Source: Glycera tridactyla
Taxonomy: Eukaryota
Reading direction: 5' to 3'
NCBI GenBank assembly: GCA_965644265.1
Contig: OZ286474.1
Span: 64,294,001 to 64,358,000 of the forward strand
Length of the DNA stretch: 64,000 nucleotides
Under the pieces are notes generated by a model. That model saw only the letters and a list, made by a program, of their open reading frames with translations, ran no database searches and was not told the DNA's origin. The first letter of the stretch is position 1, and each line of letters opens with the position of its first letter. Both the position numbers and the translations under genes were made by a program. Positions 12,072 through 62,179 of this stretch are shown here, one piece after another.

Positions 12072-12177
12072 TCCACCACCCATCATAACAACCACATTCA
12101 TCCCAAAATTCAACGCCCTCCAGGAGATCACCAAAAGAAACTGGGACCTTCTCAGACGCTCCAGCACCACCAAACAC

Positions 12178-12807
12178 TTGGCGCTTAGGGATCCCATCAT
12201 AGGCTACAAACGCCCCAAAAATCTGAAAGACATCCTGGTGCGAGCGAAATTTGACCGACCCCAGAACAAGGGAACCACCTCATCCACCCCACTATACCAA
12301 CATGCCAACATATGCCAACGGAGCCCGTGCCGCTACTGCAAAATACTGGACACCACAGGCAGAATCACGAGCAAATACACTGGAAGAACCTACTCCAGCA
12401 AAAGCAACGTCACATGCAAATCCAGCAACTTGATATACTGTATTGAATGCACCAAATGCGGGATGCAGTATGTCAGACAGACCAAAAACAAATTGATGAC
12501 CAGATTCCAAGCACATTGGAGAACCATCACCAACAACGAACACCTGTATGATGTTGCAAGACACTTCAACCAGATTGACCACCAGGGAGTGGACAATATG
12601 AAGATCTATATCTTAGACTTCATCTATGCACACCCAGAGAGCAAATTCAGTAAGGAACTACGAGACATCATTGAATTCCACTGGATGCACAGACTCCGAA
12701 CCACACTACCCATGGGCATCAACACCATGGACAAATTACCCATCACCTCTGTCAAGGCACAAAAGTGGAAAAGACAGAAACCTTTACCGAACCACCAAAC
12801 GAGTTAA
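12178..12807 (+). pseudogene. GIY-YIG endonuclease with Cys-rich linker
   Basis: CQRSPCRYC linker; TCKSSNLIYCIECTKCGMQYVRQT (YVG changed to YVR); RFQAH; VARHF; E-x-HW-x3-L-x-T...GIN. Confidence 0.9.
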
Positions 12808-29212: not shown

Positions 29213-30502
29213 GTGGAGACATCCGTTGAAAATGCATCGAGAATTAACAAAAAAGAAATGCTGGACAAATATCGTAGGCTTGTAGAGGCCTTTCAAGATC
29301 ACGAGGATAGGTTAAAGTCTCATGAGGGTAAATTGCAAGATCACGAGGAGAGACTGAAAACCACTGAAGATAAGCTGAAAGAACTTGCTATGCAGACGGA
29401 GAAAGAACTAGATGCTATTGATGCAGATGACTTGGTAGATTCATCCCAAGAGGAGAAGCTGGAGGAAGATATGGAAGCAATGGAAGCCTTGAAGGATTTT
29501 CTATACCAACTTTCTTCAAGAGTGGATAATGCTGAAGAGTGAATAGAGAAAAATGAGATAGATATCGACCTCATTCAGAAAATAGAGGGACTCAGTGTAG
29601 TGATAGTGGAGGGTCTGGAGGTCAAGAAGAATGTTACTCTTCATGAACAGATTGTATGTTTTTTTAATGAAACTGTTGGTCTCAGTATCACAGTAGATGA
29701 TATTTGTCAAGTTATCAGGTATGGTCCAATCAGAGAGGGGAAGCCAAGAGCGGTAATGGTGAGATTTTGCAATCCAAACTTGCGTAGGAAAGCACTGAAA
29801 AGAAAGACAACTCTAAAAGGCACAAATTATTTTCTTCGGGAACAACTTACCCCATGGAAAGGGAGACTTTTCAGTCTTGCTAGAGAAGCAAAAAAAGATG
29901 GAAAGATTGCTTTCTGTTGGACACAGGATGGAAGAGTCTGCATTTCACATAGGAAAGACCAGAATAGAATAATGCTCAGAAATCAACAAACATTAATAGA
30001 TGCAATCAAACGAGCTGGGAAATACCCTAAACAATCAGAAAACAAGGATGAAATAACTGAAAAGGGAAATCTTTTACCCCAAAAAGACTCAGGGTTAGAC
30101 AAATCGAACACACCACGTGGAAAATCGAGCCCAGACCTTGATCAGACGAGTATACCTAAACAACTCAGTGACTTTGAAAATGTTTCAGAATCAGTTTCTG
30201 ATACACATAGGCTTTCTAATTCTAAAAAAAAGGAAAGTAATCCAGCAAAAGGCGCAAATCCCCCCCAAAATGAAAATGTGAAGAAATGGCAGAACATAAA
30301 AGCAAAAGTCCTAGAAAAGGAACGAAGTCTTAAAACTATGAAACAGTCTACACTTAGTTTCGGTGAGGCGTATATTCCAAACCAAGATGACTTTCCTGAC
30401 CTAAAGCAGTCATCAGAAACATCCGTGAGAGGGGGAAAAAGTAATCGTGGTTTACGGAAACCAAATAATCGAACAGGCCGTGGGGCTAAAGCCGGAACCT
30501 AG
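29213..30502 (+). pseudogene. LINE ORF1 (coiled coil plus RRM-like/FP25K-like domain), one in-frame stop at 29540
   Basis: Heptad/charged region, then VIVEGL...RYGPIREGKPRAVMVRF...FLREQLTP...CWTQDGRV; both ORF pieces are in the same frame. Confidence 0.85.
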
Positions 30503-30905
30503 CTGTTGCGCATGTGTACTGCTGTACATGGAGTTTCCTGTGATAAACAACATGCGGCGATAATTGTTTGATATGGCCACATTTCACGCCTGTCACGTAA
30601 CAAATAGAAGGGAAAGAAGATTTCCTCTTGGGCGCGCGTGTGTGCGACCTGGCCTAACTGATGTATAGGCATCTATCCATTCAATTGTTATAATTGATAA
30701 AATTGCACTGGCAAGAAGTGATACACATTCTACGCCCGTAAATGTAGATAAATCTTAAATGTAGATAAATATTGAATGATCACTGTCATATCTATGATGG
30801 AAAATATATATTAAAGCATGATAAAATCATAAATAAATGTATAGAAATTGTAGCTAATGTAATAGACATTGTAGTAAATTTTGTTATCACTATTTTGTTG
30901 ACTAG

Positions 30906-31781
30906 GTGGAATACCAGTCGGCTGTAGAAGCTGCCAAACAACGAGTGAATTGGAGCTATGAGAAGTGTCCAGTCTATCACCAACGAGACCTTCTTGAAAT
31001 GTATGGAGGACCAGATGTGACATTTCTTGGAAGCAGTCACGTGTGGAGACTGGGAAAATTTGTTCAAGAAATGCCGCAAGATAACACAATGAAGCCTCTA
31101 TTATCTACTTGGGACTATAAAGGAATAAGTGGGGCGAGCTGGGGCTGCTTTGAGAATGAAGTTCAAGGCATTTTTGCTAAGTCAAAAGCAGGAACAAATA
31201 AAGCCAGGCGATATGGCAATACACTGCAGAAAATGATAGATGCTCAGAGATCACCAAACTACCTGGTTATGGTTTTAGGGTCGAATGACTTGGATCGCTT
31301 TGCCACCAAAATGAGAACTGTAAATAGAAGTGTTAGAGATCCACGTGTTAGGAAAAGGAAGATTATCAAGATGCGCCATGAAGAGTACAGTTATTTGATA
31401 AATAAAATTTGTGATGTACTTAGACTGTTGCACAGTTTTTTCCCTTTGACTACTTTCTGCTTTGTCCCGATCACATGGAGACACGGATGGGATGATGAGA
31501 CTAGAGTGTTGGGTTTGTGGGTTGATCACTATCTAAAAAATCATGCATTTATCAGAATGCTTTTTCTACACACACATCAGCTATTTGTCAAACCATTTAA
31601 AAATTATTCCCAGCTCATGGAATTGCAGAAGAAACAAAAGAGGAAGAAGCCATGTTCCCATGGAGATATTTTAAATGGCATGTTTCTTGCTGATAAAATA
31701 CATCTCAACCAGTATGGTAATCTTGGCCTATGTTACTCTGTGGTTGGACAATTACTAGATAATTGGTTTTATACTACCTAA
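30906..31781 (+). CDS. SGNH/GDSL-type esterase of LINE family A, intact frame beginning at a splice acceptor
   Basis: Blocks FLGSSH (I), GISGA (II), VLGSND (III), DKIH (V); preceded by tattttgttgactAG at 30904-05; no ATG at the start of the frame. Confidence 0.85.
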   Translation: MEYQSAVEAAKQRVNWSYEKCPVYHQRDLLEMYGGPDVTFLGSSHVWRLGKFVQEMPQDNTMKPLLSTWDYKGISGASWGCFENEVQGIFAKSKAGTNKARRYGNTLQKMIDAQRSPNYLVMVLGSNDLDRFATKMRTVNRSVRDPRVRKRKIIKMRHEEYSYLINKICDVLRLLHSFFPLTTFCFVPITWRHGWDDETRVLGLWVDHYLKNHAFIRMLFLHTHQLFVKPFKNYSQLMELQKKQKRKKPCSHGDILNGMFLADKIHLNQYGNLGLCYSVVGQLLDNWFYTT

Positions 31782-33100
31782 TAAGTATGAAGCATGTGCG
31801 GTGTGAAATTTGAATGGATTATGGAACCATATTATGATTCTTCAAGCACTTTGAATTTATTTTGTGTGTCAATATATATACTCATGCCTTGTTATTAGTA
31901 TGTTATATAGGAGGAGATCTGCGAGGAACATACCTGAATACCTCTGAACCTTAACAATGGAGGCTGATAGATGCAGTGCCCTGATGGGGTAGGTACTGAC
32001 GTGGGATTCGTAAAATATCCAAAATGTGCCAATAAGCACAAATGCTGGGCTAAATCTGAGGCATTATGTTCTCATCATTGGCTGTCGTCCTAGAATGCAT
32101 TGAGAATTATTCCAGCCTCCTAGGCTGATCAAGAATTTGTTAAAAATGTCATAGATATTTATCTATTTATTTAATGGGTAGAGTTGCAGTGGAATGTATT
32201 CCGGCTCTCACTGTTGGCTGTGGTCCTGGAAGAAGAAACTGCAAAAATGCCTCACAAGATGAAGATAAAATCAAAATTTTTTTATTTCAAAATCTAATTA
32301 TCCTGCCACATGCCTGCCTGGCCAGGGTGGTGCATCTCACGGTTTCCCGAGCAGTGCAAGGGTATTTCCATATTTTCATATTTACATATTTTCACAACTT
32401 TCCTCTTCTATTTCCTAAGTCAATATTAATTATAATTTTCCCTGCAAATAACATACTTCTGTTGGTGCCGTGTGAAGCCTTACAATGACAGGAATGTTTT
32501 GGGGATTTCAATGAGGCGATATGGGATATAATTTGTGAAATGGTATTTTGAAAGCTTGTAATTGAGTCTGATTGTAATGCCATACATAAAGGTGACATAT
32601 ATTTAAAAAGGTCGGCAAGTTTGCTTTCTCTTAATTTCAAATATTATACTGTTGATTTGAGTAAATTCTAAGAGGGATCATTTTAGTTTTCTTATACAGG
32701 AGAGAGCATGTAGTTAGTCACATTATCTTGAAATAGACTTGAATTTGGTCGCATTTATCACTTTCATTTCCTAGGACAAAACCTGAATTTGGCCAATTTT
32801 TGAAGTAAATCATTTTTTAAAACATATTGTCTATTACTACTAATGTTATATTAGGCAGTACTTTGTTCACTATGATTTTCGATGAATTATTAGGGTGTGA
32901 GCTGGGGAGCTGTGAGGAATGCATTTACTTTAGGTTTTCTTTTGTTTAGTGTATTTTCAAGCCCTGGTGAGGTGAAGTTAAAGCCATACTTGACATTTGA
33001 CTTTTTCGTATATCGAATCATAAATGATGAGACAGTGAAAGCTAGTGATATATGTGTGTTTATGAAGTGTACTTGTGGATCTTGAGTTGAATTTGAATTG

Positions 33101-33540
33101 GTATCCTATCTTACAAATATCAAAAAGCCAAGATGACTGTACAGTATTTTGAGTTGAATTCAAGGCTTTATTTTCTCCAGTGACTTGTTTATCAGTATTT
33201 ATGTACATTAATTTTGGAAACTCAGATTGACCATTGTCCACTCTTTTCAAATTATTTTCCAATCCAATTTTATTTTAATTAATTGCTTGTCACCAAGTAT
33301 GTTTTTGTTCACTGATTTTGTTCACGGAGTATCCCATCTTACAAATATCAAAGAGCCAGGATTGCTGTACAGTTTTTGAGTTGAATTCAAGGCTTTATTT
33401 TCTCCGGCAACTTGTTTATCAGTATTTATGTACACTAAGCTGGGAAACTCAGATTGACCATTGTCTACTCTTTTCGAATTATTTTCCAATTTTATTTCAA
33501 TTAACTGCTTGTCACCAATTGTGTTTTTGTTCACTGATTT
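33101..33540. repeat. Tandem duplication (~228-bp unit) in the LINE-A esterase-pol spacer
   Basis: gtatcc(t/c)atcttacaaatatcaaa...gttcactgatttt occurs twice. Confidence 0.85.
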
Positions 33541-33949
33541 TCCTAAAAACTTTGCTTAAAGTGCGAATTGTTTTGTTTAATGAACTTTGATTGCCATACA
33601 AAGGTGAAGTGAAAGGTAAGTGTGACTTTGCTGTAAATCAAGAATTTGAACGGAATAATATTGCATCTTGAGGGAACTCATTTCCTGTTGCTTTTCTATA
33701 TATGAAAACTTCTCTCCTCTTTACTGATAGTGGTGATTTATTAACTAGGCTGAATTAATAAGTTTCCCAAGTTGGTGTGGGACCTGCTGTCTCTCCCAGA
33801 GAGGCAAACATAGCTATTTACTAATAAATACACTATAGCAATTTACACTAAAACATCTTGAATTTAGTTGAATTAACTATTGCTGTACTCGAAATATTTT
33901 TCTATTCTAAATTAAAATACAGATTTCCAACCACTGATTCATCATCATC

Positions 33950-36745
33950 ATGTCATCTCTCATAGACCCATTTGTAGGTAAGAAGGAGAGCTTTTCGAAA
34001 CCAACTCCACAACTGGCATCAATACAAGAATGTCATGACTTTAAAGGAGTGAAAATCTTAATATAAGAAGCCTTGTGAAAAAAGTGGATGAGATACAATT
34101 GCTTCTGTTACAGAGTAAACTTGATATTTTGATACTATCAGAATCTTTCCTCACCTCAACTATAGAAAACTCTGAAATTAGTATTCAAGGATATTATATT
34201 ATTAGAGCTGATAGGACTGTGGAAAGTGGTAAGCGTACTGGAGGAGGATTAGTTGTATATATTAGGAAAGATCGTGTTGTTGAACTTATGGATGAAACAG
34301 TTATATGCTGTCCAGACCCCCTAGTGGAAACAAGAGTGTGTTTTGTGATTGGCTGGATGAAAGTCTCATAAAAATTGAACAGTGTAAGTTTGGAGATGTT
34401 TTGGTAACCGGAGATAAGAATATTGATCTAATAACCCTAGATAAGAATGATCAATATCATAAAGTGTTGAAAAATAATAATCTATCACAACTAATTACAA
34501 AACACACTAGGGTTACTGAATTTTAGTGTGAACTGCCCAGAACTCTATCACCAACATGGAGTTCTTGACACAGGAATAACAGACCATAGCATGTTGATAG
34601 TCATACGAAAGAAATTACCTATGTCAAAAGCATCCGAATTCGTTTTTTTCAGAGACTTTGCCAAGGCTGATTTTAAATTAATTCAGGATAAGATAAGAAA
34701 TGCAAACTGGGAGGAACTTTTCTCCAGTAATGATACTGATAATTGCACTAAAATTTTCCATCAGATTATGAATAATATCATAACAGAAAATGTCCCATTG
34801 AAAAGACATCGAGTGCGAGAAAATTGGTCGAAATGGCTCACAGGAGAATACCTTGATTTAGTCAAGGATCGAGAGAGAGCAAATAGAAATTTCAAATTGG
34901 ATAATTCTGAGACTAATAAAACTGCAAAGAAGGTAATAGAGAAGCAATGTAAGAACTTGAAACGAAATCTTCAACGACAATATATAGAAGAATTATTGAA
35001 AGAGTACAAGTCAGAACCAAAAAAACTGTGGGAAACTATACATGCATTTTGGGGAAAATCGAAAGGGCCTACTGAAATTATGAAGATTGGTGATACTACT
35101 GATAAGAATGAAATTTCTGAACGCTTAAATCTTTTCTTTGGAAGTATAGGGAGTAAATTAAGTGATGGGACTGATCCAATTGCCAATTTTCCGTACAATT
35201 TAAATAATGCATTAAGTTTGATGGCAGTTGATTCACATGATGTACGGAAGACAATAGATAGGTTATCAGCAACAAAGGCTGGAAAAGATGATGGGATTAG
35301 TGCTAAAATTGTTAAAAATTGTGTAGAATCCCTTTGCCCTATTTTATAACATTTATCTAATACTAGTATTTCGGAAGGGACTTTTCCTACTCAATGAAAA
35401 TCTGCAACCATTATACCGTTGTTTAAAGAAGGTAGTAGATCTTGCGAGTCAAATTATAGACCCATCAGTCTTTTATGTACCCTTGGCAAGGTCCTGGAAA
35501 GATTGATTCACCTACAAATGTCAAAGTACTTCGAAAGTCATGGTCTACTGTGTCGGGAACAGTCAGGATTCAGGGAGGGGTGCTCCACTGGCACATGTTC
35601 ATCAGTATTTTTAGATAAAATATATTTCAATATTGAAAAACGAGATACCAGTGCGGTCCTCTTCCTGGAAAAAAGGCTTTCGACACAGTAGACCATGTCA
35701 TCCTGCTTAAGAAATTGGAGAGGTACGGTGCAAACCCGATGTGTGTGAAGTGGTTCAAGAGTTATCTGACTGGAAGGAAATGTCATGTAAGGGTAAATGG
35801 AGTGATCTCGAATGAATGTACAGTGTCATGTGGAGTCCCACAGGGATCCATACTGGGCCCCCTGTTGTTCACTATATATGTGAATGATATATCACATTAC
35901 ATGAGGGGGCTCAGTATGAATCTCTATGCGGACGACACTGCTATCATGGTATCAGATAAAGATCCAATGATATTGCAGACAAGACTGGAGGATGCTCTTA
36001 AACAAGCCAGTATAAGCTTAGCTTAAACATCAAGAAAACGCAAATTATGATATTTGGTTCTAAACAACAGGTCAGTCGCTGTAATTTTGAAATGAAGTCT
36101 CAAAATGAGCACGTAAAGCAAACGAAGACTTTTAAATATCTAGGAGTGATCTTGGATGAAACGTTGAGCTTCTCCAGTCATGCTGAACATATTAGATCAA
36201 AAACTATGGGAAGGGTGGGTGTTCTTGGCAGACTCAGGGACAGACTCAGTCGAGATGTGTCCCTGATGCTGTACAGGACACTCATCCTTCCTATATTTGA
36301 TTATTGCGATATTGTTTATGACAGTCTGGGTATGGTAAATGCGAGTAAACTTCAAAAAATTCAAAATAAAGCCTTTCGAATTATAACTCGGAGTGCACCT
36401 TTAACAAGAACATCTTATATACATAATGAATTACAAATGCCATACCTAGATTGTCGTCGACAGTATCATACTCTTATACATGTAAACAACATATTGACTG
36501 AAAATGTGCATCCCCAGTATGACCCATTATGTACCTACTTACAAGTATCACATGAATATCATACCAGATCACTGGGCAAGCAATATGTATCAATAAAACA
36601 ACCTAGATCAAAAATGGCAGAGGGTTCCTTTCATTTCAGAGGTAGCAGCCTATGGAATAACTATGTGAGGAGATATGAAGAATTTGGAAGTAAACCACCG
36701 AAAGTATTTAAAGAACAACTGAAATTTTTTATGCATATTGCTTGA
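33950..36745 (+). pseudogene. LINE pol: APE endonuclease plus reverse transcriptase, several stops and frameshifts
   Basis: LNIRSL, LSESFL, GGGLVVY, GDKNID, TDHSM, NYRPISLL, QSGFR, PQGSILGPLLF, YADDTA, FKYLGV. Confidence 0.93.
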
Positions 36746-37309
36746 ATATGGTGTCTGTAGTGATTGATACAATGTTGTTAATATAGATTGGAGGGAATCA
36801 ACCTTTTCTATAGATGTTTTTGCACCGTGCCTAAGCCTGAAACTGAAATTGATTTTGATTTTGTCTTCGACTAAGAACTTGAATTTGAATTTGAATGTGA
36901 ATATGGTTGTGTAAATCAAAACAAAAACAGAGTGCGTAGGTGGATGACTCTAATAATGTTGAATTTCATCTATTTACATAATAAGTGTACCAGTTGTCTA
37001 TTATAGTTTATGTAAGGTACATATCCTTAATGAAGTTCACTAAAAAGTTTCTGTTAATCTTCTTTCTCTTGCAATAGGGTCTTCTTCTTTTATTCATACG
37101 TCATCCTCATTACATCTCTGTCAAATCCATTCATCAACTTCACCTGAAATTATAAAGATGGTTATTTGTAAACAATTTGGAATGAGTACAGCATGTATGT
37201 ATTGTTGTAATAGTAATAGTTTTCGTCGCATTGGGAACGCCGTCGATAGGAGGCATTGTATATTTGTATTTGTATACAGTACAATTGACGAATCAAAATA
37301 AAGTAACAA

Positions 37310-46165: not shown

Positions 46166-47814
46166 TTACATTCTGGTGATCTCATTTTTGGGATTCACCT
46201 TTCTACCATCGTTTTGCAACTCATATTTGTCTGTTCCATCTCCAGAAGCTGAGGCTAGCAGAGGAATGTTAGCATTATCAATAGCATTTTTAGGGGTCTG
46301 GTCCATAGCAGGGTATAGTACGTTAGGGGTTATTTCCGGGTTATATATCCCTTTACATTTCCAGCCGTCACAGTCCGGCTGGCAGATTTTTGGAATGATG
46401 TAAAATTTGCATCCAATCTCTATTCTGAATACAGCAGTAAAGCGACCTTGTAGAATACGTTTAACTTTCAAAGCTTCCCATGGAAGTAGTCTCAATCGCT
46501 CAGGCATGGGTAAAGGTGTATTCCCCATCCTATTTCCCACAATCAGACCCCTCCAAGAGGCAGACAGATACGACATGCATCGGAAGTCTTTTACCTGATA
46601 AGGTCCTGGGACTCCTAGTCCCATCAAATGATAATTTGACATAGACCCAGGAAGTTTCATGATCAAAATGTCCTGATATTCCACTAAGTTTCCTAATTCC
46701 AAGATCAGCTTACTCCTCGTTCTGCAGCGATGAGCGTACATGGTATACGCCAAGTATCCTATTATGACTAATAGTCCCGCCACAGCCAGAAGCGCCAATA
46801 CACCTACTACCTCGATATGCTTTCCTTCATAACACATGTCCTGAGTAAAGGTATCCACTTGGAAACCATCTATATGAGGGATCCTACTTTTTGTAGTGGT
46901 TGGAATGGTCCGTCCCAATAGACGTTCATAGAAGTCCTGAGGGAGGTCCTCCAGCCCATCTACAGCTGTAGGCTGTAAAACACCAGCTAAAGTATATGCA
47001 TTCATCATCTTTTCTAGCAGACAATACGAGCGCCTAGTGTATATAGCCAGGCCCATGGAGGCAACGGCTACCAAAATACTGAGCAATCCTAACACATTCG
47101 AAAGTGTGAAGAATTCGTCTGCTGAGTCTAAGTCCCACATACTAGCAGCAATCTGCTTGATAGGATTCACATCCAGCCCTTCCTTTGCTCTTTTCATCAC
47201 AGAAGCCAGTTGCATCGAATAATCGTAATCTCGATTCAAATTCAATTCAAAGTCCTCACTCACTTTGATTTCTGGCAATTTCGGTAGCCACTTCTCACTA
47301 TACAAAGTTTCACCATTCACCTCTTCAATATTTTTTCAAATCATAAATATGTGACAAAGCAGCTAGATTAATCGGATGTACGACAGTAAGCCCAGACGAT
47401 TTCTTCACACAGTTATTGATACGGGCTGGTAAAGCTGCTGCTGAGATCATATTAGATATATGAATAGTTCAACCGCATGGTCATTCCATTTGGCAATATA
47501 CGCATCCTTCTCGTTGTTTAGGTAGCTCAGCCCCACAGTGTTGAAAGATGCTCTCAGCGTTATGTACCAACACCTCACCATTTCCAACATCCACTAGGTC
47601 TACAACAGGCTCAGTTTTCTCAAATCTGAAACCACATAGCTCTCTAACCAAACCAGAATCATCTTGAAAAATGGCCGCCATACAAGATGGTTTATCCATG
47701 TCAAATATTTTCATAGATGATGAACACCTAAAAGCAGTTGTATCATCACATCTAGCTAATTCTTTATGAGTCATCTGAATATAATTCAGATTATCGTCAG
47801 ACACTCCGAGGTAT
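46166..47814 (-). pseudogene. env: env, C-terminal half (Cys-rich ectodomain, TM1, TM2, C-terminal domain)
   Basis: YLGVSDDN...CVYC...PARINNC...HPINLAAL; hydrophobic segments VLGLLSILVAVASMGLAIY and VVGVLALLAVAGLLVIIGYLAY; continues in frame from 55601. Confidence 0.82.
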
Positions 47815-47908: not shown

Positions 47909-50173
47909 ATGGACAGCTTCAGGGACTATATCTCAGGAAGGAAAATCGATAACATCGAGGATTCTGAACGGAAAATGGAAGGCAAAATCAAGCAAACTGG
48001 TGAGAACTTGAGCGATAATAAGAGTACTACGGATGGCAAGTACACCCCCCTCCCCAGAATTGCAAGGAGTTGTAGTGCTAGATCTCCAACAGACCATGAC
48101 CCAGACAATAAGAAACAACGTAGTATAGATACTGACCACGAGCTGCAAAATGAATGTTCTAAAACAGCGAACAGTGATATTGATTCACCAGAAGATTCTT
48201 TTAATTCATTAAGTGTTGCTAGTGATGAAGAAAGCGATGAAAGTGTAGTAGTAGACGATGAAGTGGAAAAAGTGGATGAATTTGCAAAGAGGCCGCTTGT
48301 ACGACTGCCAGGCTCGAATCAAGTCTCGAATGGTTCGGGAATCAGCAAGCAAATCGAGATCGCAGATCCCGAAATGACCGCCGAGACAATCGACACTCAC
48401 CCGGAGGCGAACACCGATAAACAACTTGCAGCCGTCGGTCCCCACTGCAAATCCTCCCCGTGCTCCTCGGAATCATCGCGCGTGACCACACCGATAAGTG
48501 TCAATGAGAAGAACCGACCTGACGACCATGGCGGTCACGCTTCAATGAGCACAGATATTGACTTCCCCACTGAAATCGAATTCTCCCCTTCACCAAAACC
48601 AAATGGTGGGACTACCTTGATATGTCAACCTCCTAATGCCTTTGACATTGTGAATTTGCGCAAATCGCTGCGCGAGGATCTAACTGAGATAATACACTTG
48701 GAACTGAAAAGTGATGTCAAACAACAAGTCAAATCAGAATTGATAACCGAATTGAAAACAAGTATTGTACACGAGATAAAAACAGAACTTGTACACGAAG
48801 TTAAAAGTGATCTTGTGAAAGAAATTAGGACAGAACTAAAGCTCCTGACCCATGCTGAAGTCGACAGGTGTGTCAAATCTGAAATGAAAAGCATGATCAA
48901 AACAAAGAGCTTCCAAAAAGAACTGAAAGAGGAAATAGACAATAAACTCAAAAATCGAGACATGATAAAAAACGTGTGCAAGGATGTTGCTAAACAAGAA
49001 TTGGCTCCACTCTGCAAGAAGATCGTCAATGATGATGTTTCCCATAAAATAAACAGTGAATTGGGGAAATTTCAGACAACATGGAGAAGTGAACTAACGA
49101 CAACAATAGAAGACTCGCTAATCGATAACACCAACATGCAACAAAATATCATAAAACATGATGAACTCCTGGAGAAGCTTGGTGACATTGTGAAAAATCA
49201 ACAACAAGAGATATTATGGCTTGAGACGGAACTGAAAACGATGAGAGGAGACATGGATGATAAAATCGAAACACTAAATCAGGAGATCATACAATTGAAA
49301 GAAGAAGTAAAGAAGATGATGGATATTGGAATAACTCCTGATAGTAAGGACATCAACAAAATTCAAGAGAAGATAACCATCTTGGAAAGAGACATCGAAA
49401 TATTGAAAAAGAATGACCGTCTTAATGTCATTATTGTAGACGGCCTGACCTTCGAGCGTGATACTTCTCTCTTCGAGCAGCTGGTAAGAGTGTTCAATGA
49501 TATAACTGGCTTAAAGTTAAATGAAAACCATTTGGCTCAAGCAGTCCGCTTTGGACCTGTCACAAAGGGGAAACCTAGGCCTGTGAGAGTGAGATTTGTG
49601 AACCCCAATATCAGAAGGGATCTCTTGCAAAGAAAGTCAATGTTCCAAAAATCATCAATTTTTATTAGGGAACATCTCACGCCGAACGAAAATTCTATCT
49701 TTCAAGAGGCGAAACAAGCAAAAATTGACAAAAAAATACACCAAGTATGGACATCACAGGGGCAAGTTTTTGTTGCGAAAACAGAACATGAGCAAAAAAT
49801 CTCTATACCCAGCATTGCCAAACTAAATGATATAATTAAGAGTAAAGCCAAGCAGCCGAACGATGTTGGATTCAAACCTAGACGAAGGTGGAACCCATTA
49901 AAGGGAAATCAAAATCCACCACCAAATTCAAGAATCACAGACACTACCACTGGAGCCTCAAATGCTGAGCTAAAATCGCGAGAAAACACTCAGAATAAGT
50001 CAAATCCATGGACCAATATCCCATACAAAAATGAGGCGACTATAAAATCGCGGGATGTAAGTAGCGCCGGCGGAGCAAATCAAGCCCATACTAGCGCGAC
50101 CTTGTCAGATGGGCTAAACCTGGCGAATCCGTTCGATACCCTCGGCAGCCTAGAAGAATCTCACCGACCTTAG
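47909..50173 (+). CDS. LINE ORF1p, 754 aa (disordered N-terminus, long coiled coil, RRM-like/FP25K-like domain, disordered tail)
   Basis: Uninterrupted ORF; VIIVDGL...RFGPVTKGKPRPVRVRF...FIREHLTP...VWTSQGQV is homologous to ORF1 of family A. Confidence 0.9.
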   Translation: MDSFRDYISGRKIDNIEDSERKMEGKIKQTGENLSDNKSTTDGKYTPLPRIARSCSARSPTDHDPDNKKQRSIDTDHELQNECSKTANSDIDSPEDSFNSLSVASDEESDESVVVDDEVEKVDEFAKRPLVRLPGSNQVSNGSGISKQIEIADPEMTAETIDTHPEANTDKQLAAVGPHCKSSPCSSESSRVTTPISVNEKNRPDDHGGHASMSTDIDFPTEIEFSPSPKPNGGTTLICQPPNAFDIVNLRKSLREDLTEIIHLELKSDVKQQVKSELITELKTSIVHEIKTELVHEVKSDLVKEIRTELKLLTHAEVDRCVKSEMKSMIKTKSFQKELKEEIDNKLKNRDMIKNVCKDVAKQELAPLCKKIVNDDVSHKINSELGKFQTTWRSELTTTIEDSLIDNTNMQQNIIKHDELLEKLGDIVKNQQQEILWLETELKTMRGDMDDKIETLNQEIIQLKEEVKKMMDIGITPDSKDINKIQEKITILERDIEILKKNDRLNVIIVDGLTFERDTSLFEQLVRVFNDITGLKLNENHLAQAVRFGPVTKGKPRPVRVRFVNPNIRRDLLQRKSMFQKSSIFIREHLTPNENSIFQEAKQAKIDKKIHQVWTSQGQVFVAKTEHEQKISIPSIAKLNDIIKSKAKQPNDVGFKPRRRWNPLKGNQNPPPNSRITDTTTGASNAELKSRENTQNKSNPWTNIPYKNEATIKSRDVSSAGGANQAHTSATLSDGLNLANPFDTLGSLEESHRP

Positions 50174-50560
50174 TGAACAATGGCTCGATTAATAAGCGCT
50201 ATACGAATTAATGACAGATTAGCAGGCTTCGAGAATCCGGTAAGAACGAAGGGATATATACAATTGAAAGGCGGGGTGTGGTTTGTGCTCTATATCTCGG
50301 GTTTAGTGATCAAATCGGAATCGATACCGTGGGATTTCCCTCATCTTAATGACGTCATCACTCCATATATGGTAGTTAATTCCAAACACCATATGGTATT
50401 GAACTTGCGGGATTTTCCTGATAATAGTGACGTCAGAACCCCATATAAGGAAATTATTGTTAAAATTAGGAGTTCCGCGTTTTAACTCCATACCATCGCA
50501 TGAATACAACTGCCACAACCATGAATGAATATATTATAATGATACTATTAATTTCTGCAG

Positions 50561-51460
50561 GCTGACTGGACATCATCACTGAGACTAGCCAAGAGTCGAG
50601 TCCAAATTCCTCCAAAAAGATGTCCTATATACAGAAGACGAAAACAGCTAGAAGGGATCGAATACCCTGAGGTTCTCGTCACAGGCTCCAGCCACGCTGT
50701 CCATACTGGCTGTTATATCAAGAACCTATCTACTGGTGACGCAATGGGAGAAGTCATGTCAAAATGGAAATTCAGAGGCTTCAGTGGTAGCAAGTGGACC
50801 GAAATACAAGAACACCTACATGGTCGTTTTGGTGATGATCAGCGTAAACATGATAAATATGGTAACACTATTCAATCCCTGACATCTGATGGCTATAGGC
50901 CTAACTATGTAATCATCATTCTTGGAAGTAATGATGTTGACCAGTTTAATGTTGAAATAAGAAATATCTCAAAACAAATCACCAACCCATTGGTGAGGAA
51001 TACAGAAATTAACAGAGAAAAAATTGCTCGTTTTGGTAAGATTAAAGCAAAAGTTCTCAACTTGCTACGACACCTAGAATACCTGTATCCTGAAGCACTT
51101 ATCATAACAATACCAGTCCTGTGGCGCCCTAAGTGGTGCGATGAAGCAAGATCCCTGGCACTTTGGATTGATCATCTGTTCGTGATGGAACTGAAGAATA
51201 AGCACCTTGATGTTGGTATTCAGCAGAATGTTAAAATGCTACAAATAAACCAATTGTTTGTACGCCCATATAAGAATACCCCACTTGAACAGACCCGTAA
51301 ACAAAATCGTAAACATGCTGCTAAATTTGGTGAACTACTAAATGGCATGTTGGCATTTGATCGGGTTCATTTGAACAACTATGGCATGCGTATTCTTAGT
51401 AGACACATAGTGGGCTCAGTATTGGACCATTGGATTTCTAAATCTGAAACTAACAAATAA
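50561..51460 (+). CDS. SGNH/GDSL-type esterase of LINE family B, intact frame beginning at a splice acceptor
   Basis: Frame is open from 50552, upstream of the listed ATG 50744; VTGSSH (I), GFSGS (II), ILGSND (III), DRVH (V); preceded by tattaatttctgcAG ending at 50560. Confidence 0.87.
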   Translation, partial: ADWTSSLRLAKSRVQIPPKRCPIYRRRKQLEGIEYPEVLVTGSSHAVHTGCYIKNLSTGDAMGEVMSKWKFRGFSGSKWTEIQEHLHGRFGDDQRKHDKYGNTIQSLTSDGYRPNYVIIILGSNDVDQFNVEIRNISKQITNPLVRNTEINREKIARFGKIKAKVLNLLRHLEYLYPEALIITIPVLWRPKWCDEARSLALWIDHLFVMELKNKHLDVGIQQNVKMLQINQLFVRPYKNTPLEQTRKQNRKHAAKFGELLNGMLAFDRVHLNNYGMRILSRHIVGSVLDHWISKSETNK

Positions 51461-52351: not shown

Positions 52352-55233
52352 ATGAACATTTGTATAAACTCATCTAAAGAATTAGCCGAATTATCTGGTA
52401 TCAAATATGCATATCTGAATGTCTGCAGTATTGTCCGCAAAATTGAAGACATAAGAGTTTTCTTGTTTAGGAGTAAGATAGACTTGCTAATTATTGGGGA
52501 AAGATTCCTGAATACTTCTATATCTGATTATGAGATTCAGATCAATAATTATAATATGTATAGATTCGACAGGGATTTAGGACAGGGAAAACGAGGGGGG
52601 GGGGTCTACTTGTGTATACTAGAATAGACAGAGATTTTGAATTCATTAGTATTTGGGGTCTATGTACGCCAGATCTAGAATATGTATGGCTAAAATTGAA
52701 CCTGAAGGATACAAGACCAACATATATATGTGGCTACTATCGTCCACCTGACGGAAATGTTATAAATGCCATTGACCTACTTGATAATAAGTATAAAGAT
52801 GTCATACATCTAGGGAATCATGATGTAATTTTTCTCGGAGACACGAATATAGATTTGGCATCTAAAAATAGACACTCTGAAAAATTAATAAATTTTTTGA
52901 AAGAAAATCACCTTACGCAGGAGATAATAAATCCAACTCGTATCACGAGTAAATCAAAATCGCTGATAGATCATATTATCACAAATAACCGAGAATTATA
53001 TGCTCGATCTGGCCAAATAGATATTGGTGTCTCTGATCATTCTATGATATTCACGATTCGAAAGAAGGGCCGATCATCTAAAAGAAGTCACTACATACAT
53101 TTGAGAGATTATAAAAACGCAGACTTTGAGAAAATAAATGCTGAGATTTTAAACATAGATTGGAAATTTCTGAATAATCTTGATGATATAGATTCCACAA
53201 TGAAAGACTTCTACATGAAAATTGGGCCTATTTTTGAATCGCATATTCCTGTCAAAAGAGTGAAAGTGAGAGATGATGCACCAGCATGGATGACTGGGGA
53301 GTATCATTGCATGGTAGATGAACGTGAGAAGGTAAGCAAACAGAAAAGACTTGACCCTACCCCTCAGATATGTTTAAGAAAGAAAGAAATTCAGAAAGAA
53401 ACCAAGAAATTGAAAATCCATCTTCAACGTAACTTTTTGAAAAGCAAACTAAACGAAAATCATGATGATCCTAAAACTCTGTGGAAAACTATAAGACATT
53501 TTTGGCCATCAAATAAACAAAACTCATCAATTAATAAAATAAATGGTAAAACAAGTGATCTTGAAATGTCTGAAGAGTTAAATAAATTTTTTGGAACCAT
53601 TGGAACCTCCCTATCAGAAACAATTGGACCTGTGGACCTCGATCCCACATCACTTATTAGACAGAAATATCACAATACCTTCTCACTATCAGAAACCACC
53701 AAAGATGCAATCCAGGAAATTATTGATGATATTAACCCGCATAAGGCTGGAATGGAAGATGTCCTCTCTGGTAAGTTTCTTAAGGGCATATCAGCATCTA
53801 TTTCACTACCGCTATCCCACATTTTTAATAAAAGTATACGTGATGGTAAATTTCCCACAGCTTGGAAACAAGCGACGATTAAGCCTTTATTTAAAGAAGG
53901 ACAGAAATCTGACCCTGCAAATTACCGTCCTATAAGCCTGTTAATACCTGCTAGTAAATTACTAGAGAGGATAATACAAAATCAGGTATCTTCTTACTAC
54001 GAAAGAATGAATCTACTGTGTCGAGAACAGTCGGGTTTCAGAAAGTTTCACTCCACTGGGACCTGTTTGATAGATTTTTTGGATGGCATATATCGAGGTA
54101 TAGATGAAGGAAAAGCAAGTGGAGTGATCTTCCTGGACCTGAAAAAAGCTTTCGATATGGTGGACCATTCAATCCTTTTACAGAAATTATCGGATTACGG
54201 TTTTGATCCACGGTCTGTACAATGGTTTGCCAGTTATTTAACCGATCGCGTATGCATGACACGAGTTAATGATGTTACATCAGGTCGACTGCCAATCAAG
54301 TGTGGGGTACCACAGGGATCAATACTTGGCCCTAGTCTTTTTACAATCTATATTAATGACCTTCCTACTTTCCTAGACAACGTGAAGACCAATTTGTATG
54401 CAGATGATACTGCCATCTCAGTCAGAGGAGATAATGCAAATGACTTAGAAATAAAGATGAATGATAACCTCTCTAAGGTTGCAACATGGTTGGCAGCAAA
54501 TAAACTGTCACTAAATGTAAAGAAAACGAAAGCGGTTGTTTTTGGTACTCGTAATATGATAAAAAATTATGGAAATTTAAATATTATAATAAATGAAACT
54601 AAAATTGAGATCGTAAATGAAATGAAATATCTGGGGCTCGTGCTTGATTCGCTGTTGACCTTTAACACTCATACTGAATATGTACGTAAAAAAACTATCG
54701 GCAAGATCAGGTTTCTTGGTAGACTAAGACCAATTTTAGATCAATCAACGACCATGATGTTATATAAAAGCCTGATCTTGCCGATTATTGATTATTGTGA
54801 TATCATATACTGTGGGACGAGTCAGAAAAGCTTACAAGATATACAAAGATTACAAAACCATGCCCTCAAGGTCGTCGCACGAAAACCCAAACGCACAAGT
54901 ACTATAGAATTACATGAGGAATTGAATATGCCCTTATTAGAAAAACGTCAAGAGCACCACACTCTTATACAAACAAGTAGAATGCTAGACGAAAAGTCGC
55001 CTGGAAAATTTAAAGATTTTTGTAAAATAAAAGCTAATCGACATTCTCACCAGACAAGAGCCAGTGCGAAAACATTGCTTGAAAAACCTGATACTAGATT
55101 GAGAATGTGTGAAAATAACTTTACAGTGCGTGCAGCAAAAATTTGGAACAAGTACTGCGAAGACTTTGAGGACTTTGAATTATTGCCTTATGATCAATTT
55201 AAAGACCATGTGAAACAATTTCTGCATTTATAG
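52352..55233 (+). CDS. LINE pol (APE plus RT) with a single frameshift in a G10 run at 52595-52604
   Basis: YLNVCSI, IIGERFL, GGGLLVY, CGYYRPP, GDTNID, SDHSM, NYRPISLL, FLDLKKAFD, PQGSILGP, YADDTA, KYLG; 873 codons open after the run. Confidence 0.93.
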
Positions 55234-55600
55234 TAGACTTACTCTTTAAACTTTTGCTATATATTGACCAAAGACGCCTATTTATCGGACATGAACATTG
55301 ACGATACACATCTCACCTCTATTACGATACCAACCCAAAAGGAAAGAAGTTTATAATCTTTGTAATGCTCACCTTATTATTTTATTTTTTCAAAATTCAG
55401 CATTTATTAAGTTAGAAAATGTTTTTGGATTTCTTGGTTATTATACTGTATTTTATTTTTATTTTTACATATTTGTCACTTATATGTGCGGATACTAACC
55501 CATTGCCATTGTCACTAACGATTTACTGGAGAGGGCTGCTACAGGCAGTTAATTGTATTAATCGTTATAAAATAAAGGTATATCTATCTATCTATCTATC

Positions 55601-57123
55601 TATTCAACAGGAGTCTTCAGACGACTAGTCTGGGTTGAGTCATCTGTAATAGGAGTATTATGGATGGTCACAGAGTACAACCTAAAATCTTTTGTCAATG
55701 CTGACAACGGGAAGTCCAAAGAGACCATTAGATACTCCTCATTAGTCCTAAAATAATTCACCCGTCCATATCGATAATAAAACTGAGGAGATAATTCCGT
55801 GAGATGAAAATAGGGATAATCTCATCTCATTTGCTCCTGCAGAGTCAAGATAGTATCTGTCAAGATTGCGTGATTCACCAAATAGGGGCTCAACTTCCCT
55901 CTTACTAAATCATTCACTGCTGCCATAAGATGGTCAATCTGAGGGCTCAATGTTTGCATTTTTTCTATCATGCTCGCAAGCACTGAACTGGAACTAATGC
56001 TGTACTGCATCACCCTCCAGAGGCGGTTGTCCACATGATGGGACAGGTCCTGCAGCTGTCCCTGCAATTCCGTTTGTAGTGCTGAAATGGTCCCTGCCAC
56101 GTTGGTAAATCGTTGGGACACTACATCCATGAACGAAGCAGTTTCACTTTGAAATTTGGTGAAGTGCCTCGCCGCTGTGAGTTGCTGATCTGTAGCAAAC
56201 TTCACCACCCTAGCCAGTCTCTCAACATCTTCGTTGATGGATAGTCCGAATACGTGTTTCCCTATCCAAGCGAACGGATTCCATCTCTTAACTTGACTAT
56301 TACACCTCACCACAGGTATGTACTGTTGAACTATTTCTCCCATCTCACCCAGCTGTATATCTACCTGCATAGCTAATTCCAAATAATGGTTATATTGTGC
56401 TAATTTATGATCCAAAATATTATTGACTTCATATGAGTCCTTCTGGGTGATATTCGCCAAAATCAAGGGTTCTGGTGCCTGTTGGGCTATTCTATCTTTG
56501 ATAGAACGTCTGGTTCGTTTTCCCTGTCCCCATTCATCCATTAGAGATGAACATTGAGGGTCTGGGCATTGTCTCTCAAATTCCTTTATACAATCAGGGT
56601 TATTATTTTCACAAGCGTCTCTAGCAGCTCGTCTTGAGCATACCAGACGTTTCTGTCTACCAGAGGATGTGAGATCCTTATCGATATCACTTATATCCTT
56701 CTTCATACACGCTTGATAGTTTACTACATAAGCCTGATAGGTCTGAGTATATCACCCATAGCTACTCCAGTTCACATAAGAGGCTAGATCCAAAATGGCA
56801 GTCCAAACTTTATTCGCATCTCTTACCATTTGGCGTTGAAACTTTCTCAGAAATCTATCTAACGAGTGGTTATCAGTACAATGCTGGTCCGTGCATGTTG
56901 TTTCTACATCTCTGAACAATTGCCTGCTAACTTCAGGAGGTATATCTACACAAAAGATATGTGTCCAACTTGAAGAAGCTAGATATAGTGTTTTCAAAGG
57001 TTGAAAACTCACACCATAGTTTGGTCTACTTACTGTATCTAGAACCCCATTGACTTCCATTTTGATATTCGAGATATCCAAATTAGATAAGGCCATAAGG
57101 GCAACTGTCCAAACCAGCGCCAT
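55601..57123 (-). pseudogene. env: env, N-terminal half (signal peptide, furin-like sites, fusion peptide, heptad repeat); two in-frame stops
   Basis: MALVWTVALMAL signal; RPNYGVSFQP...WTHIF; KRTRR and VKR/WNPFAWIGKHVFGLS; heptads; GKLSPYLV. These features resemble class I F-type fusogens (baculovirus F, errantivirus env). Confidence 0.85.
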
Positions 57124-62128: not shown

Positions 62129-62179
62129 ATTACATGGATCAATGATCTCAATGTCATCATCGAAAGTGAGGCGTGCCAG

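What the first reader, a model, noticed from the sequence alone, without database searches (positions are those of the whole stretch)
30425..31781. Second, diverged LINE family carries the same intron at the same position
Seen: in family A the esterase frame starts at ttgttgactAG/GTG (30906). The first residues VEYQSAVEAAKQRVNWSYEKCPVY align without gaps to ADWTSSLRLAKSRVQIPPKRCPIY from family B. ORF1 has a phase-0 TCC/GTGAGA donor at 30425, giving a 481-nt AT-rich intron against 504 nt in B. The intron interiors are not visibly similar, yet all four SGNH catalytic blocks are intact in both. Inference: acceptor position, phase, size and catalytic residues conserved between two distant families point to selection, so this would be a clade-level feature rather than cryptic splicing.
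Basis: partly seen in the sequence, partly recalled or inferred. Interest (0 to 1): 0.85.

Follow-up and report, generated by a model that had tools for sequence, protein, structure and literature searches.

The report
LINE esterase gene with conserved intron
A decayed jumping gene (LINE) carries an extra lipase-like gene split by an intron at a site shared with distant relatives, which is unexpected for RNA-copied elements, but the intron most likely starts after the gene's own tiny first exon, not inside the neighbouring gene as first proposed.

Summary
The sequence facts hold. The family A esterase frame opens exactly at TAG|GTG (30905/30906). It aligns with family B from residue 1 (33% identity). 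The SGNH catalytic residues are present, and a phase-0 GTGAGA sits at 30425.

The acceptor is real and old. Eleven loci (A, B and nine contigs from one public metagenome sample) have a pyrimidine tract plus YAG at the same codon boundary, in at least four deep esterase lineages.

The donor is misassigned. In B, L006, L008, L009 and L011, an ATG lies 1-148 nt after the ORF1 stop. It opens a 15-24-codon mini-exon that ends in a phase-0 GT. The conceptual splice product is colinear with intron-less relatives that have their own Met. A has the same layout, now broken: ATG 30552, TAA at codon 4, GTAACA at 30597, and a 309-nt intron.

So this is a three-gene, CR1-like (not placed by phylogeny) LINE: an L1-type RRM ORF1p, an intron-split esterase, and EN-RT. 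No RNA evidence was available. The scan had already noted this phenomenon elsewhere in this genome; I found no published description.

The parts
29213..30502 (+). Copy A, ORF1 (coiled-coil segment plus L1-type RRM-CTD domain). Probably 5'-truncated. One in-frame TGA at 29540-29542. Stop TAG at 30500-30502.
   Evidence: ORF list and sequence. 33-39% identity to B ORF1. Aligned with B and L006 in A5, whose B member folds like human LINE-1 ORF1p.
30425..30430 (+). Probably fortuitous.
   Evidence: Present. It lies 7 codons after the conserved ORF1 tail motif (DFPDL in A), whereas B's counterpart lies 26 codons before that motif. L006 and L009 have no counterpart.
30552..30596 (+). Copy A, proposed esterase exon 1: a 15-codon mini-exon with its own ATG, 49 nt after the ORF1 stop. 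Inactivated by TAA at codon 4.
   Evidence: Same 15-codon length as in L006, L008 and L009. Its start ATGCGGCGATAATT resembles B ATGGCTCGATTAAT and L006 ATGCCTCGATTATT. The degenerate pattern built from these occurs only at 30552 and 50180 in the window (expected 0.06; the pattern was derived from the sites themselves).
30597..30905 (+). Copy A, proposed phase-0 GT-AG intron of 309 nt. Weak donor GTAACA; acceptor ttttgttgacTAG. GC 0.31.
   Evidence: 6-16 stops in each frame. The acceptor sits at the same codon boundary as in 10 other loci.
30906..31781 (+). Copy A, esterase exon 2: 291 codons, open, with SGNH blocks I, II, III and V present. No ATG upstream of residue 32.
   Evidence: The fold of the B homologue matches SGNH/GDSL hydrolases.
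31782..34074 (+). Copy A, long non-coding spacer between the esterase gene and ORF2. Contains a ~227-bp tandem duplication at 33101-33541.
   Evidence: B has a comparable spacer of 891 nt and L010 one of 1.1 kb.
34075..36745 (+). Copy A, ORF2 (endonuclease and reverse transcriptase) in at least six ORF pieces, so a dead copy.
   Evidence: tblastn with B ORF2 gives 35-53% identity over four segments. ORF list.
36879..36905 (+). Copy A, short (TGAATT)n-like repeat in the 3' UTR. Probable element end.
   Evidence: Read from the sequence. Inference only.
47909..50173 (+). Copy B, intact ORF1 (754 aa): coiled coil, L1-type RRM-CTD, and a tail with the NPFDTLG motif. Stop TAG followed by TGA.
50180..50239 (+). 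Copy B, esterase exon 1: a 20-codon mini-exon (starts MARLI) beginning 6 nt after the ORF1 stop.
   Evidence: Followed by ccg|GTAAGA in phase 0, the best-scoring donor in the region.
50240..50560 (+). Copy B, proposed phase-0 intron of 321 nt with acceptor ttaatttctgCAG. Holds two TGACGTCA palindromes at 50350 and 50428.
50561..51460 (+). Copy B, esterase exon 2 (299 codons). No Met precedes the catalytic Ser.
   Evidence: AF2 model pLDDT 86.7; Foldseek top matches are SGNH hydrolases.
52352..55233 (+). Copy B, ORF2 (APE endonuclease plus RT). One frameshift at a G-run near 52596-52606.
   Evidence: Pfam RVT_1 at 2.5e-38 and Exo_endo_phos_2 at 5e-8. Sequence and ORFs.
55582..55603 (+). Copy B, (TATC)n microsatellite tail.
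   Evidence: Read from the sequence.

Best explanation
**What it is.** Copy A (about 29.2-36.9 kb) is a dead, probably 5'-truncated member of a LINE lineage with three genes. I call it CR1-like, but I did not place it by phylogeny.
- Gene 1 is an L1-type ORF1p with coiled coil, RRM and CTD.
- Gene 2 is an SGNH esterase.
- Gene 3 is ORF2, with endonuclease and reverse transcriptase.

**Structure of the esterase gene.** It has its own start codon in a very short first exon placed 1-148 nt after the ORF1 stop. A phase-0 GT-AG intron of about 0.3-0.8 kb follows. The second exon holds the whole catalytic domain.
- In A: exon 1 is 30552-30596 (now with a stop at codon 4 and a weakened donor), the intron is 30597-30905, and exon 2 is 30906-31781.
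- In B: exon 1 is 50180-50239, the intron is 50240-50560, and exon 2 is 50561-51460.

**How it probably works (inferred, not shown).**
- The full-length unspliced RNA is the template that gets copied back into the genome. That is why genomic copies keep the intron.
- A spliced fraction of the RNA is the only form from which a complete esterase can be translated.
- Translation probably starts by termination-reinitiation, or a similar event, just after ORF1.
- Occasional copying of spliced RNA would give the intron-less relatives.

For: **Acceptor.**
- Eleven loci carry a pyrimidine tract plus YAG at one and the same codon boundary. The esterase frame is closed or unrelated upstream of it.
- Pyrimidine enrichment gives P<1e-5 against control AG sites.

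**Mini-exon.**
- L006, L008 and L009 have ATG plus 15 codons (consensus M-[PG]-[RN]-x-[FY]-I-P-P ... R-P-K-[IV]), then GTAAGT, GTATGT or GTGAGT in phase 0.
- The conserved residues are encoded with synonymous differences.
- B has ATG plus 20 codons plus GTAAGA. L011 has ATG plus 24 codons plus GTATTG. A has ATG plus 15 codons plus GTAACA.

**Junction check by homology.**
- Mini-exon joined to exon 2 aligns colinearly with intron-less homologues that have their own Met, such as P0030, P0004, P0047, P0007 and P0016.
- The L011 product aligns without any gap to P0013, P0035 and P0096. Exon 1 against their first 24 residues gives shuffle P about 0.001.

**No way to read through.** The introns have 4-23 stops in every frame. 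In B and L008 no Met precedes the catalytic Ser in exon 2.

**ORF1 donors not conserved.**

**Protein identities.**
- The esterase model matches SGNH hydrolases, including PAF-AH Ib.
- The ORF1 model's ten best matches are all human LINE-1 ORF1p.
- ORF2 has APE and RT domains.
- L010 shows the same three-gene order without the intron.
Against: - No transcript or protein evidence of splicing was obtainable.
- In A the mini-exon is broken (TAA at codon 4) and its donor GTAACA lacks the +5 G. The L011 donor GTATTG is also weak.
- The mini-exon peptides of A and B resemble those of the other lineages only at the first few codons.
- B also has a perfect GTAAGT in phase 0 inside ORF1 (50057), which could be used as well.
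- All external loci come from one metagenome sample (ENA ERZ23486739, NCBI GCA_013332675.1, Logan SRR11343830). They are probably one eukaryote's DNA, so spread across species is not shown.
- Only one copy of each of families A and B was available.
Confidence: 0.72

Rival explanations
1. The intron runs from a phase-0 GT inside ORF1 (30425 in A, 50057 in B) to the esterase acceptor. Splicing would then make an ORF1p-esterase fusion protein, and there is no separate esterase start.
For: Both GTs exist and are in phase 0, and B's is a perfect GTAAGT. The fusion frame is open in both copies.
Against: - L006 and L009 have no in-phase ORF1 donor of score 6 or more in the last 300 nt, and L008 has only GTCAGG.
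- The A donor lies 7 codons after the conserved ORF1 tail motif, the B donor 26 codons before it.
- Intron-less relatives continue upstream into a short Met-initiated N-terminus that matches the mini-exon, not ORF1.
- In L010 the intron-less esterase is a separate ORF starting 145 nt after the ORF1 stop.
Confidence: 0.07
2. Alternative 5' splice sites. Both the mini-exon donor and, in some families such as B, an ORF1-internal donor are used. This would give a stand-alone esterase and a minor ORF1p-esterase fusion.
For: B has two good phase-0 donors, GTAAGT at 50057 and GTAAGA at 50240, upstream of one acceptor.
Against: There is no conservation of the ORF1 donor in other lineages. By my rough estimate, chance occurrence of an in-phase GTRAG in 50-100 codons is not small.
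Confidence: 0.1
3. No splicing at all. The esterase frame would be translated some other way (non-AUG start, internal entry) or would be a relic. The GT, the AG and the pyrimidine tract would be coincidental or serve another purpose.
For: No RNA evidence exists. A is a dead copy. A, L006 and L009 have an internal Met 12-18 residues before the catalytic Ser that could give a shortened enzyme.
Against: - 11 of 11 loci have YAG plus a pyrimidine tract exactly where homology begins.
- A conserved Met-initiated mini-exon ends in a phase-0 GT in five to six loci.
- The conceptual splice reproduces the N-termini of intron-less relatives.
- B and L008 have no Met before the catalytic Ser.
Confidence: 0.07

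Closest known systems
Esterase-type (type IV) ORF1p of CR1, L2 and RTEX LINEs, e.g. zebrafish ZfL2-1 (Kapitonov and Jurka 2003; Schneider et al. 2013, PMC3905857; Metcalfe and Casane 2014, PMC4120745)
   Same: A LINE-borne SGNH/GDSL esterase lies upstream of an APE-RT ORF2. The catalytic Ser, Gly, Asn, Asp and His are kept. The fold resembles PAF-AH-like SGNH hydrolases.
   Different: - In the known elements the esterase is ORF1 itself, uninterrupted and joined to a coiled coil. Schneider et al. state that no esterase-containing ORF1p in Repbase had an RRM domain.
- Here the esterase is a separate second gene behind an L1-type RRM-CTD ORF1p, and it is split by an intron.
- Sequence similarity is low. 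Pfam GDSL models score below their cut-offs, and the ZfL2-1 structure was not among the listed PDB matches.
Penelope-like elements, the retroelements known to keep introns (Arkhipova et al. 2003; Craig et al. 2021, PMC8557442)
   Same: A spliceosomal intron persists in genomic copies of a retroelement through retrotransposition.
   Different: - PLEs have a GIY-YIG endonuclease and a telomerase-like RT. Their best-studied intron is in the 5' UTR and overlaps the internal promoter.
- Here the element is an APE-type LINE and the intron is a phase-0 coding intron inside an accessory gene.
Splicing of LINE RNAs: human L1 spliced variants and functional splice sites in zebrafish ZfL2 (recalled from memory: Belancio 2006, Larson 2018, Tamura 2007; not checked here)
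   Same: LINE RNA can be a substrate of the spliceosome.
   Different: In those cases splicing removes essential parts and yields defective copies. The sites are not needed to build a gene. Here the intron is needed to assemble the esterase reading frame, and its position is conserved between deep lineages.
Retroviruses and env-carrying Gypsy-like elements (general knowledge)
   Same: The proposed logic is the same: unspliced RNA serves as the genome, and spliced RNA serves as the messenger for an accessory, membrane-related protein.
   Different: Those are LTR elements with a different replication mechanism. For this LINE the division of labour is only inferred.
GDSL esterase as ORF3 of bdelloid rotifer Vesta LTR retrotransposons and Athena elements (Rodriguez et al. 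2017, PMC5408684)
   Same: An SGNH/GDSL esterase is carried as an additional, separate ORF of a retroelement.
   Different: The element class is different, the gene lies downstream of pol, and the capture was independent according to that paper. The word 'intron' does not occur in its text.

Membership tests
SGNH/GDSL hydrolase | Conserved blocks I (G-x-S), II (G), III (G-x-N-D) and V (D-x-x-H) with catalytic Ser, Asp and His | tested here: met
   In A and B, G42-S43-S44-H45, G76, G-S-N-D and D-x-x-H are invariant. S44 and G122 are invariant across 16 homologues, and H45, G76, N124 and H270 are kept in at least 90%.
SGNH/GDSL hydrolase | SGNH alpha/beta/alpha fold | tested here: met
   The AF2 model of the B esterase has pLDDT 86.7. 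65 Foldseek matches have E<=0.001. The natural-protein matches among the 50 listed are SGNH/GDSL-type esterases (PAF-AH Ib, sialate O-acetylesterase, Axe2), with probability 1.0.
SGNH/GDSL hydrolase | Score above the Pfam gathering cut-off for a GDSL/SGNH model | tested here: not met
   B scores 20.0 bits on Lipase_GDSL_2 (cut-off 32.9) and 18.6 on Lipase_GDSL (cut-off 23.6). A has no hit. This is a divergent member.
Esterase-type (type IV) LINE ORF1p | The esterase is the first ORF, uninterrupted, with a coiled coil and no RRM | tested here: not met
   The esterase follows a separate RRM-CTD ORF1 and is split by the proposed intron.
Esterase-type (type IV) LINE ORF1p | Transposon-specific conserved positions (H191 and S228 of ZfL2-1; Schneider 2013) | not tested
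   No alignment to ZfL2-1 was made. It did not appear among the PDB sequence or fold matches listed.
CR1-group (Jockey superfamily) LINE | ORF2 with an APE endonuclease and RT, and no RNase H or LTRs | tested here: met
   Pfam RVT_1 at 2.5e-38 and Exo_endo_phos_2 at 5e-8 on B ORF2.
CR1-group (Jockey superfamily) LINE | Short microsatellite-type 3' tail instead of poly(A) | tested here: met
   (TATC)n at 55582-55603 in B. A (TGAATT)n-like run at 36879-36905 in A. Element ends were not confirmed by target-site duplications.
CR1-group (Jockey superfamily) LINE | RT phylogeny places the element inside CR1/L2 | not tested
L1-type (type II) ORF1p | RRM plus CTD fold of LINE-1 ORF1p | tested here: met
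   The AF2 model of B residues 501-654 has pLDDT 85.7. The ten best Foldseek matches are all human LINE-1 ORF1p (2yko, 2ykp, 2ykq, 2ldy), E 1e-5 to 5e-4. Pfam Baculo_FP_2nd scores 24.5 bits on the CTD part.
U2-type spliceosomal intron | GT at the 5' end, YAG at the 3' end, and a pyrimidine tract | tested here: met
   Donors are GTAAGT, GTATGT, GTGAGT, GTAAGA, GTATTG and GTAACA. Acceptors are 10 CAG and 1 TAG. Pyrimidine enrichment gives P<1e-5.
U2-type spliceosomal intron | Removal restores one reading frame whose product matches uninterrupted homologues | tested here: met
   All are phase 0. The products are colinear with P0030, P0004, P0047, P0013 and P0035.
U2-type spliceosomal intron | Spliced RNA is observed | not testable with these tools
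   No transcript data for this organism. All protein-database homologues come from unspliced gene calls on DNA contigs.
Penelope-like elements | GIY-YIG endonuclease and a telomerase-like RT | tested here: not met
   ORF2 has an APE-type endonuclease. The resemblance is only in keeping an intron.

The most novel reading that the evidence does not exclude
A deep lineage of APE-type LINEs has kept a working spliceosomal intron inside a third gene through very many rounds of RNA-mediated copying. That would imply a retrovirus-like split between unspliced genomic RNA and a spliced messenger for a lipid-acting esterase, or an indispensable cis-element inside the intron. It would also mean that an RNA-binding ORF1p and an esterase act together in one element, a combination that Schneider et al. 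(2013) did not find within any single ORF1p in Repbase.
Probability: 0.45. Interest if true: 0.85.

Novelty: new variant of a known kind. Interest (0 to 1): 0.66.

Why it matters
LINEs multiply through an RNA copy, so any intron that is spliced should vanish from new copies. A coding intron kept at one position in several deep LINE families means one of two things. Either these elements control which RNA form is copied, or the intron carries something they cannot lose. Either would be a new piece of LINE biology.

The finding also shows an L1-type RNA-binding ORF1p and an SGNH esterase encoded side by side in one element. Schneider et al. (2013, PMC3905857) found no RRM domain in any esterase-containing ORF1p in Repbase. 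These elements therefore give a natural system for asking what the esterase adds to retrotransposition.

For annotation, ORF-based or prokaryote-style gene calling truncates these esterases at the acceptor. The gene models need the mini-exon.

Tried and rejected
- **Word-indexed protein search with the A esterase.** No hit. The exhaustive HMM search with the A+B profile gave 92 distant homologues and no close relative of A or B.
- **The search for related loci on metagenome contigs.** The A+B alignment returned only one short locus, L007, which lacks the junction.
- **MAFFT of the A and B spacers, and of the mini-exon regions of five loci.** No usable DNA alignment outside the first codons.
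- **Sequence searches of ORF1 against the PDB.** The single sequence and the 3-sequence profile both found nothing. Only the fold search identified it. One search failed on a frame slip and was corrected.
- **Target-site duplication of B.** Two candidates were examined by eye: TGAGTCATCTG at 47768 and 55638, and a TCAGAC-type repeat near 47797 and 55621. Joining the flanks across the first candidate does not restore the interrupted minus-strand ORF in frame. The ends of B are left undefined.
- **Mini-exons in L001, L002, L003 and L012.**
  - L003 and L012 have too little upstream sequence.
  - L001 and L002 look decayed. L002 has an M-P-R-H-I-A-R-L-I-S stretch resembling B's M-A-R-L-I-S, but no good phase-0 donor.
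- **dN/dS between A and B.** Not attempted. At 33% amino-acid identity, synonymous sites are saturated.
- **Identity of the metagenome sample.** No paper was found for its accession numbers.
- **Literature searches for a LINE esterase intron or a three-ORF esterase LINE.** Nothing relevant found.
Full report
**1. What is in the window**

Two diverged LINE copies lie on the + strand.

Copy B (about 47.9-55.6 kb) is nearly intact:
- ORF1 at 47909-50173 (754 aa).
- An esterase frame at 50561-51460.
- ORF2 at 52352-55233, with one frameshift in a G-run.
- A (TATC)n tail at 55582-55603.

Copy A, the subject of this finding, is a dead copy:
- ORF1 at 29213-30502, with an in-frame TGA at 29540 and probably a missing 5' part.
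- An esterase frame at 30906-31781.
- A 2.3-kb spacer.
- ORF2 in at least six pieces at 34075-36745.

The proteins of A and B are 33-53% identical, so these are two different families of one lineage.

**2. Check of the observation**

- The A esterase frame opens at TAG|GTG, 30905/30906.
- It aligns with B from residue 2 of both, without gaps over the first ~90 residues. Overall it is 33% identical, E 8e-65.
- GTGAGA at 30425 and GTAAGT at 50057 are in phase 0 of their ORF1 frames. They lie 481 and 504 nt upstream of the two acceptors.
- The spacers are not alike.
- The SGNH blocks are intact.

**3. What the proteins are**

- An AlphaFold model of the B esterase (pLDDT 86.7) matches SGNH/GDSL hydrolases such as PAF-acetylhydrolase Ib, sialate O-acetylesterases and acetyl-xylan esterases. 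Pfam GDSL models score only below their cut-offs.
- A model of the conserved ORF1 domain (pLDDT 85.7) has human LINE-1 ORF1p (2yko, 2ykp, 2ykq, 2ldy) as its ten best matches.
- ORF2 has an APE endonuclease and RT.

The element therefore encodes an L1-type RNA-binding ORF1p and also a separate esterase. Schneider et al. [quoted passage not shown]

**4. Relatives**

The word-indexed search found nothing. An exhaustive HMM search with the A+B profile found 92 distant homologues (best E 1.4e-27). Every cluster whose source I looked up came from unspliced gene calls on short contigs. Every contig I fetched belongs to one metagenome sample: ENA ERZ23486739, NCBI GCA_013332675.1, Logan SRR11343830.

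Many of these ORFs read hydrophobic residues followed by Q just upstream of the conserved N-terminal motif. The DNA shows why:
- L001, L002, L003, L005, L006, L008, L009, L011 and L012 each have a pyrimidine tract plus CAG exactly at the codon boundary where A has TAG and B has CAG.
- The junction is always 13 residues before a conserved R-[VIAL].
- Pyrimidine content at -20..-4 averages 0.65, against 0.44 at 1020 control AG sites (P<1e-5).
- Seven further homologues show the same signature at peptide level only.

The acceptor is therefore a conserved feature.

**5. The 5' side of the intron**

L006 (3.2 kb) carries the end of an RRM-type ORF1 and its stop codon. After 148 nt comes an ATG with 15 codons (M-P-R-L-F-I-P-P-P-R-Y-R-P-K-I) and GTAAGT in phase 0. 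A stop-rich stretch of 521 nt follows, and then the acceptor.

L008 and L009 have the same 15-codon exon, 6 and 18 nt after their ORF1 stops. Their donors are GTATGT and GTGAGT. The conserved residues are encoded with synonymous differences.

| Locus | ORF1 stop to ATG | Mini-exon | Donor | Intron |
|---|---|---|---|---|
| B | 6 nt | 20 codons (ATG 50180) | GTAAGA (50240) | 321 nt |
| L011 | 1 nt | 24 codons | GTATTG | 328 nt |
| A | 49 nt | 15 codons (ATG 30552), TAA at codon 4 | GTAACA (30597) | 309 nt |
| L006 | 148 nt | 15 codons | GTAAGT | 521 nt |
| L008 | 6 nt | 15 codons | GTATGT | 809 nt |
| L009 | 18 nt | 15 codons | GTGAGT | 546 nt |

The first codons of the A, B and L006 mini-exons are alike (ATGCGGCGATAA, ATGGCTCGATTA, ATGCCTCGATTA). 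A degenerate pattern built from them occurs only at 30552 and 50180 in the window (expected 0.06). That test is partly circular, because the pattern came from the sites themselves.

**6. Test of the junction by homology**

A second set of homologues has its own Met and no interruption. Examples are P0030, P0004, P0047, P0007, P0016/P0099 and P0013/P0035.
- Mini-exon joined to exon 2 is colinear with their N-termini. For example, R-Y-R-P-K-I | P-P-T-D-E-E-N-K-I-A-W in L006 lines up with I-Y-R-P-R-V-C-P-D-A-K-Q-Q-K-L-A-I in P0030.
- The L011 product aligns with P0013, P0035 and P0096 without a single gap. Its 24-residue exon 1 scores better against their first 24 residues than 99.9% of shuffles.
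- L010 (10.4 kb) shows the complete three-gene order with an uninterrupted 783-aa esterase ORF starting 145 nt after ORF1. A 1.1-kb spacer then precedes ORF2.

**7.

- L006 and L009 have no in-phase ORF1 donor of score 6 or more in the last 300 nt of ORF1. L008 has only GTCAGG.
- The ORF1 tails share a motif: DFPDL in A, PFDTLG in B, DFPPLG in L006 and L009, NFPLL in L010. The A donor lies 7 codons after it and the B donor 26 codons before it.
- An in-phase GTRAG within 50-100 codons is not rare by chance (my estimate, about 10-20% per element).
- Use of B's GTAAGT as an alternative donor cannot be excluded.

**8. Distribution**

I built a maximum-likelihood tree of 33 esterase rows. I left out fragments and rows without a recognisable block I. 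Several intron labels rest on peptide signatures only.
- Intron-bearing rows fall in at least four deep groups. One is A+B, with support 100/99.
- One large clade of 11 rows is intron-less (100/99).
- The intron-less pair P0013/P0035 sits as sister to intron-bearing P0019 (99/91), nested among the intron-bearing rows of one group. This fits a precise intron loss, as expected if spliced RNA is occasionally copied.
- The direction of change is not proven, because the tree is unrooted.

**9. Mechanism**

Shown:
- The gene anatomy.
- The conserved splice signals.
- Frame restoration.
- That a complete esterase cannot be read from unspliced RNA. There are stops in all frames, and B and L008 have no Met before the catalytic Ser.

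Inferred:
- The unspliced RNA is the copying template.
- A spliced fraction serves as the esterase messenger.
- Translation starts just after ORF1 by reinitiation or similar. The ATG is 1-18 nt after the ORF1 stop in four loci.
- Loss of the intron happens when spliced RNA is copied.

Why the intron is kept is unknown. One idea is that it holds a needed cis-element. The B intron has two TGACGTCA palindromes in a direct repeat, but I did not see these in the A or L006 introns when reading them by eye (no search was run on the other loci).

**10. Comparison with the literature**

- LINE esterases are described as ORF1 of CR1, L2 and RTEX elements, without an RRM (PMC3905857, PMC4120745, PMC13343379). 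The word 'intron' does not occur in the first two papers. In the third it occurs only as the group II intron outgroup.
- Retention of introns is described as highly unusual and typical of Penelope-like elements (PMC8557442).
- GDSL esterases as extra ORFs are known in rotifer LTR elements (PMC5408684).
- I found no description of an intron-split esterase gene in a LINE. Repbase and Dfam could not be searched.

**11. Earlier notes of this scan**

Earlier notes report the same phenomenon on other pieces of this genome. One follow-up reads it as an esterase with its own intron. My results agree with that reading and contradict the ORF1-fusion reading given for B in this window.

**12. Verdict**

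- The conserved intron is supported.
- The ORF1-fusion donor is not supported.
- Copy A itself is a decayed witness of the arrangement.
- No transcript evidence exists yet.

Noticed in passing
window 50340-50440: The B intron holds a two-copy direct repeat about 78 nt apart. Each copy has the palindrome TGACGTCA, the consensus cAMP-response element. Only one other such site occurs in the 64 kb (3 found, 0.84 expected).
   Followed up: partly
window 50180-50485: If the B intron is not removed, the mini-exon frame stays open for 101 codons into the intron. The corresponding read-through products in L006, L008 and L009 are 21-52 residues and unrelated, so this is probably chance.
   Followed up: partly
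window 51461-52351 and 31782-34074; L010 5775-6870: A long non-coding spacer (0.9-2.3 kb) separates the esterase gene from ORF2 in A, B and the metagenome element L010. It contains direct repeats: 28 nt, 196 nt apart, in B, and a ~227-bp tandem duplication at 33101-33541 in A. It could be an internal promoter or entry site for ORF2.
   Followed up: partly
window 46166-47804 and 55600-56706, minus strand: Copy B interrupts a minus-strand run of large ORFs that look like an envelope or fusion-type protein. These lie next to a Gypsy-like gag-pol (59938-63911, minus strand). The target-site duplication of B could not be settled.
   Followed up: partly
window 8006-12807: [quoted passage not shown] Its class is the one known to keep introns.
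   Followed up: no
window 52596-52606: The only break in B's ORF2 is a frameshift at a run of about 10 G. It could be a real mutation or a homopolymer sequencing error.
   Followed up: no
window 49680-49835 (B ORF1 residues 591-642): The C-terminal domain of the L1-type ORF1p reaches the Pfam cut-off for Baculo_FP_2nd (baculovirus FP protein domain 2). This hints at kinship between LINE ORF1p CTDs and that viral protein.
   Followed up: partly
ORF1 tails: window 30390-30404 (A), 50125-50145 (B); L006 ~1200-1220; L009; L010: A short motif, [DN]-[FY]-P-x-L-(G), recurs near the end of otherwise unalignable ORF1 tails of all these elements. Its function is unknown.
   Followed up: partly
L001 118-170: About 300 nt upstream of the acceptor, L001 has a Met-initiated stretch (M-T-R-H-R-N-R-P-P-G-E-I) that resembles the region spanning the exon junction in intron-less P0013. 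There is no usable donor. The copy has in-frame TGA stops and may be rearranged.
   Followed up: no
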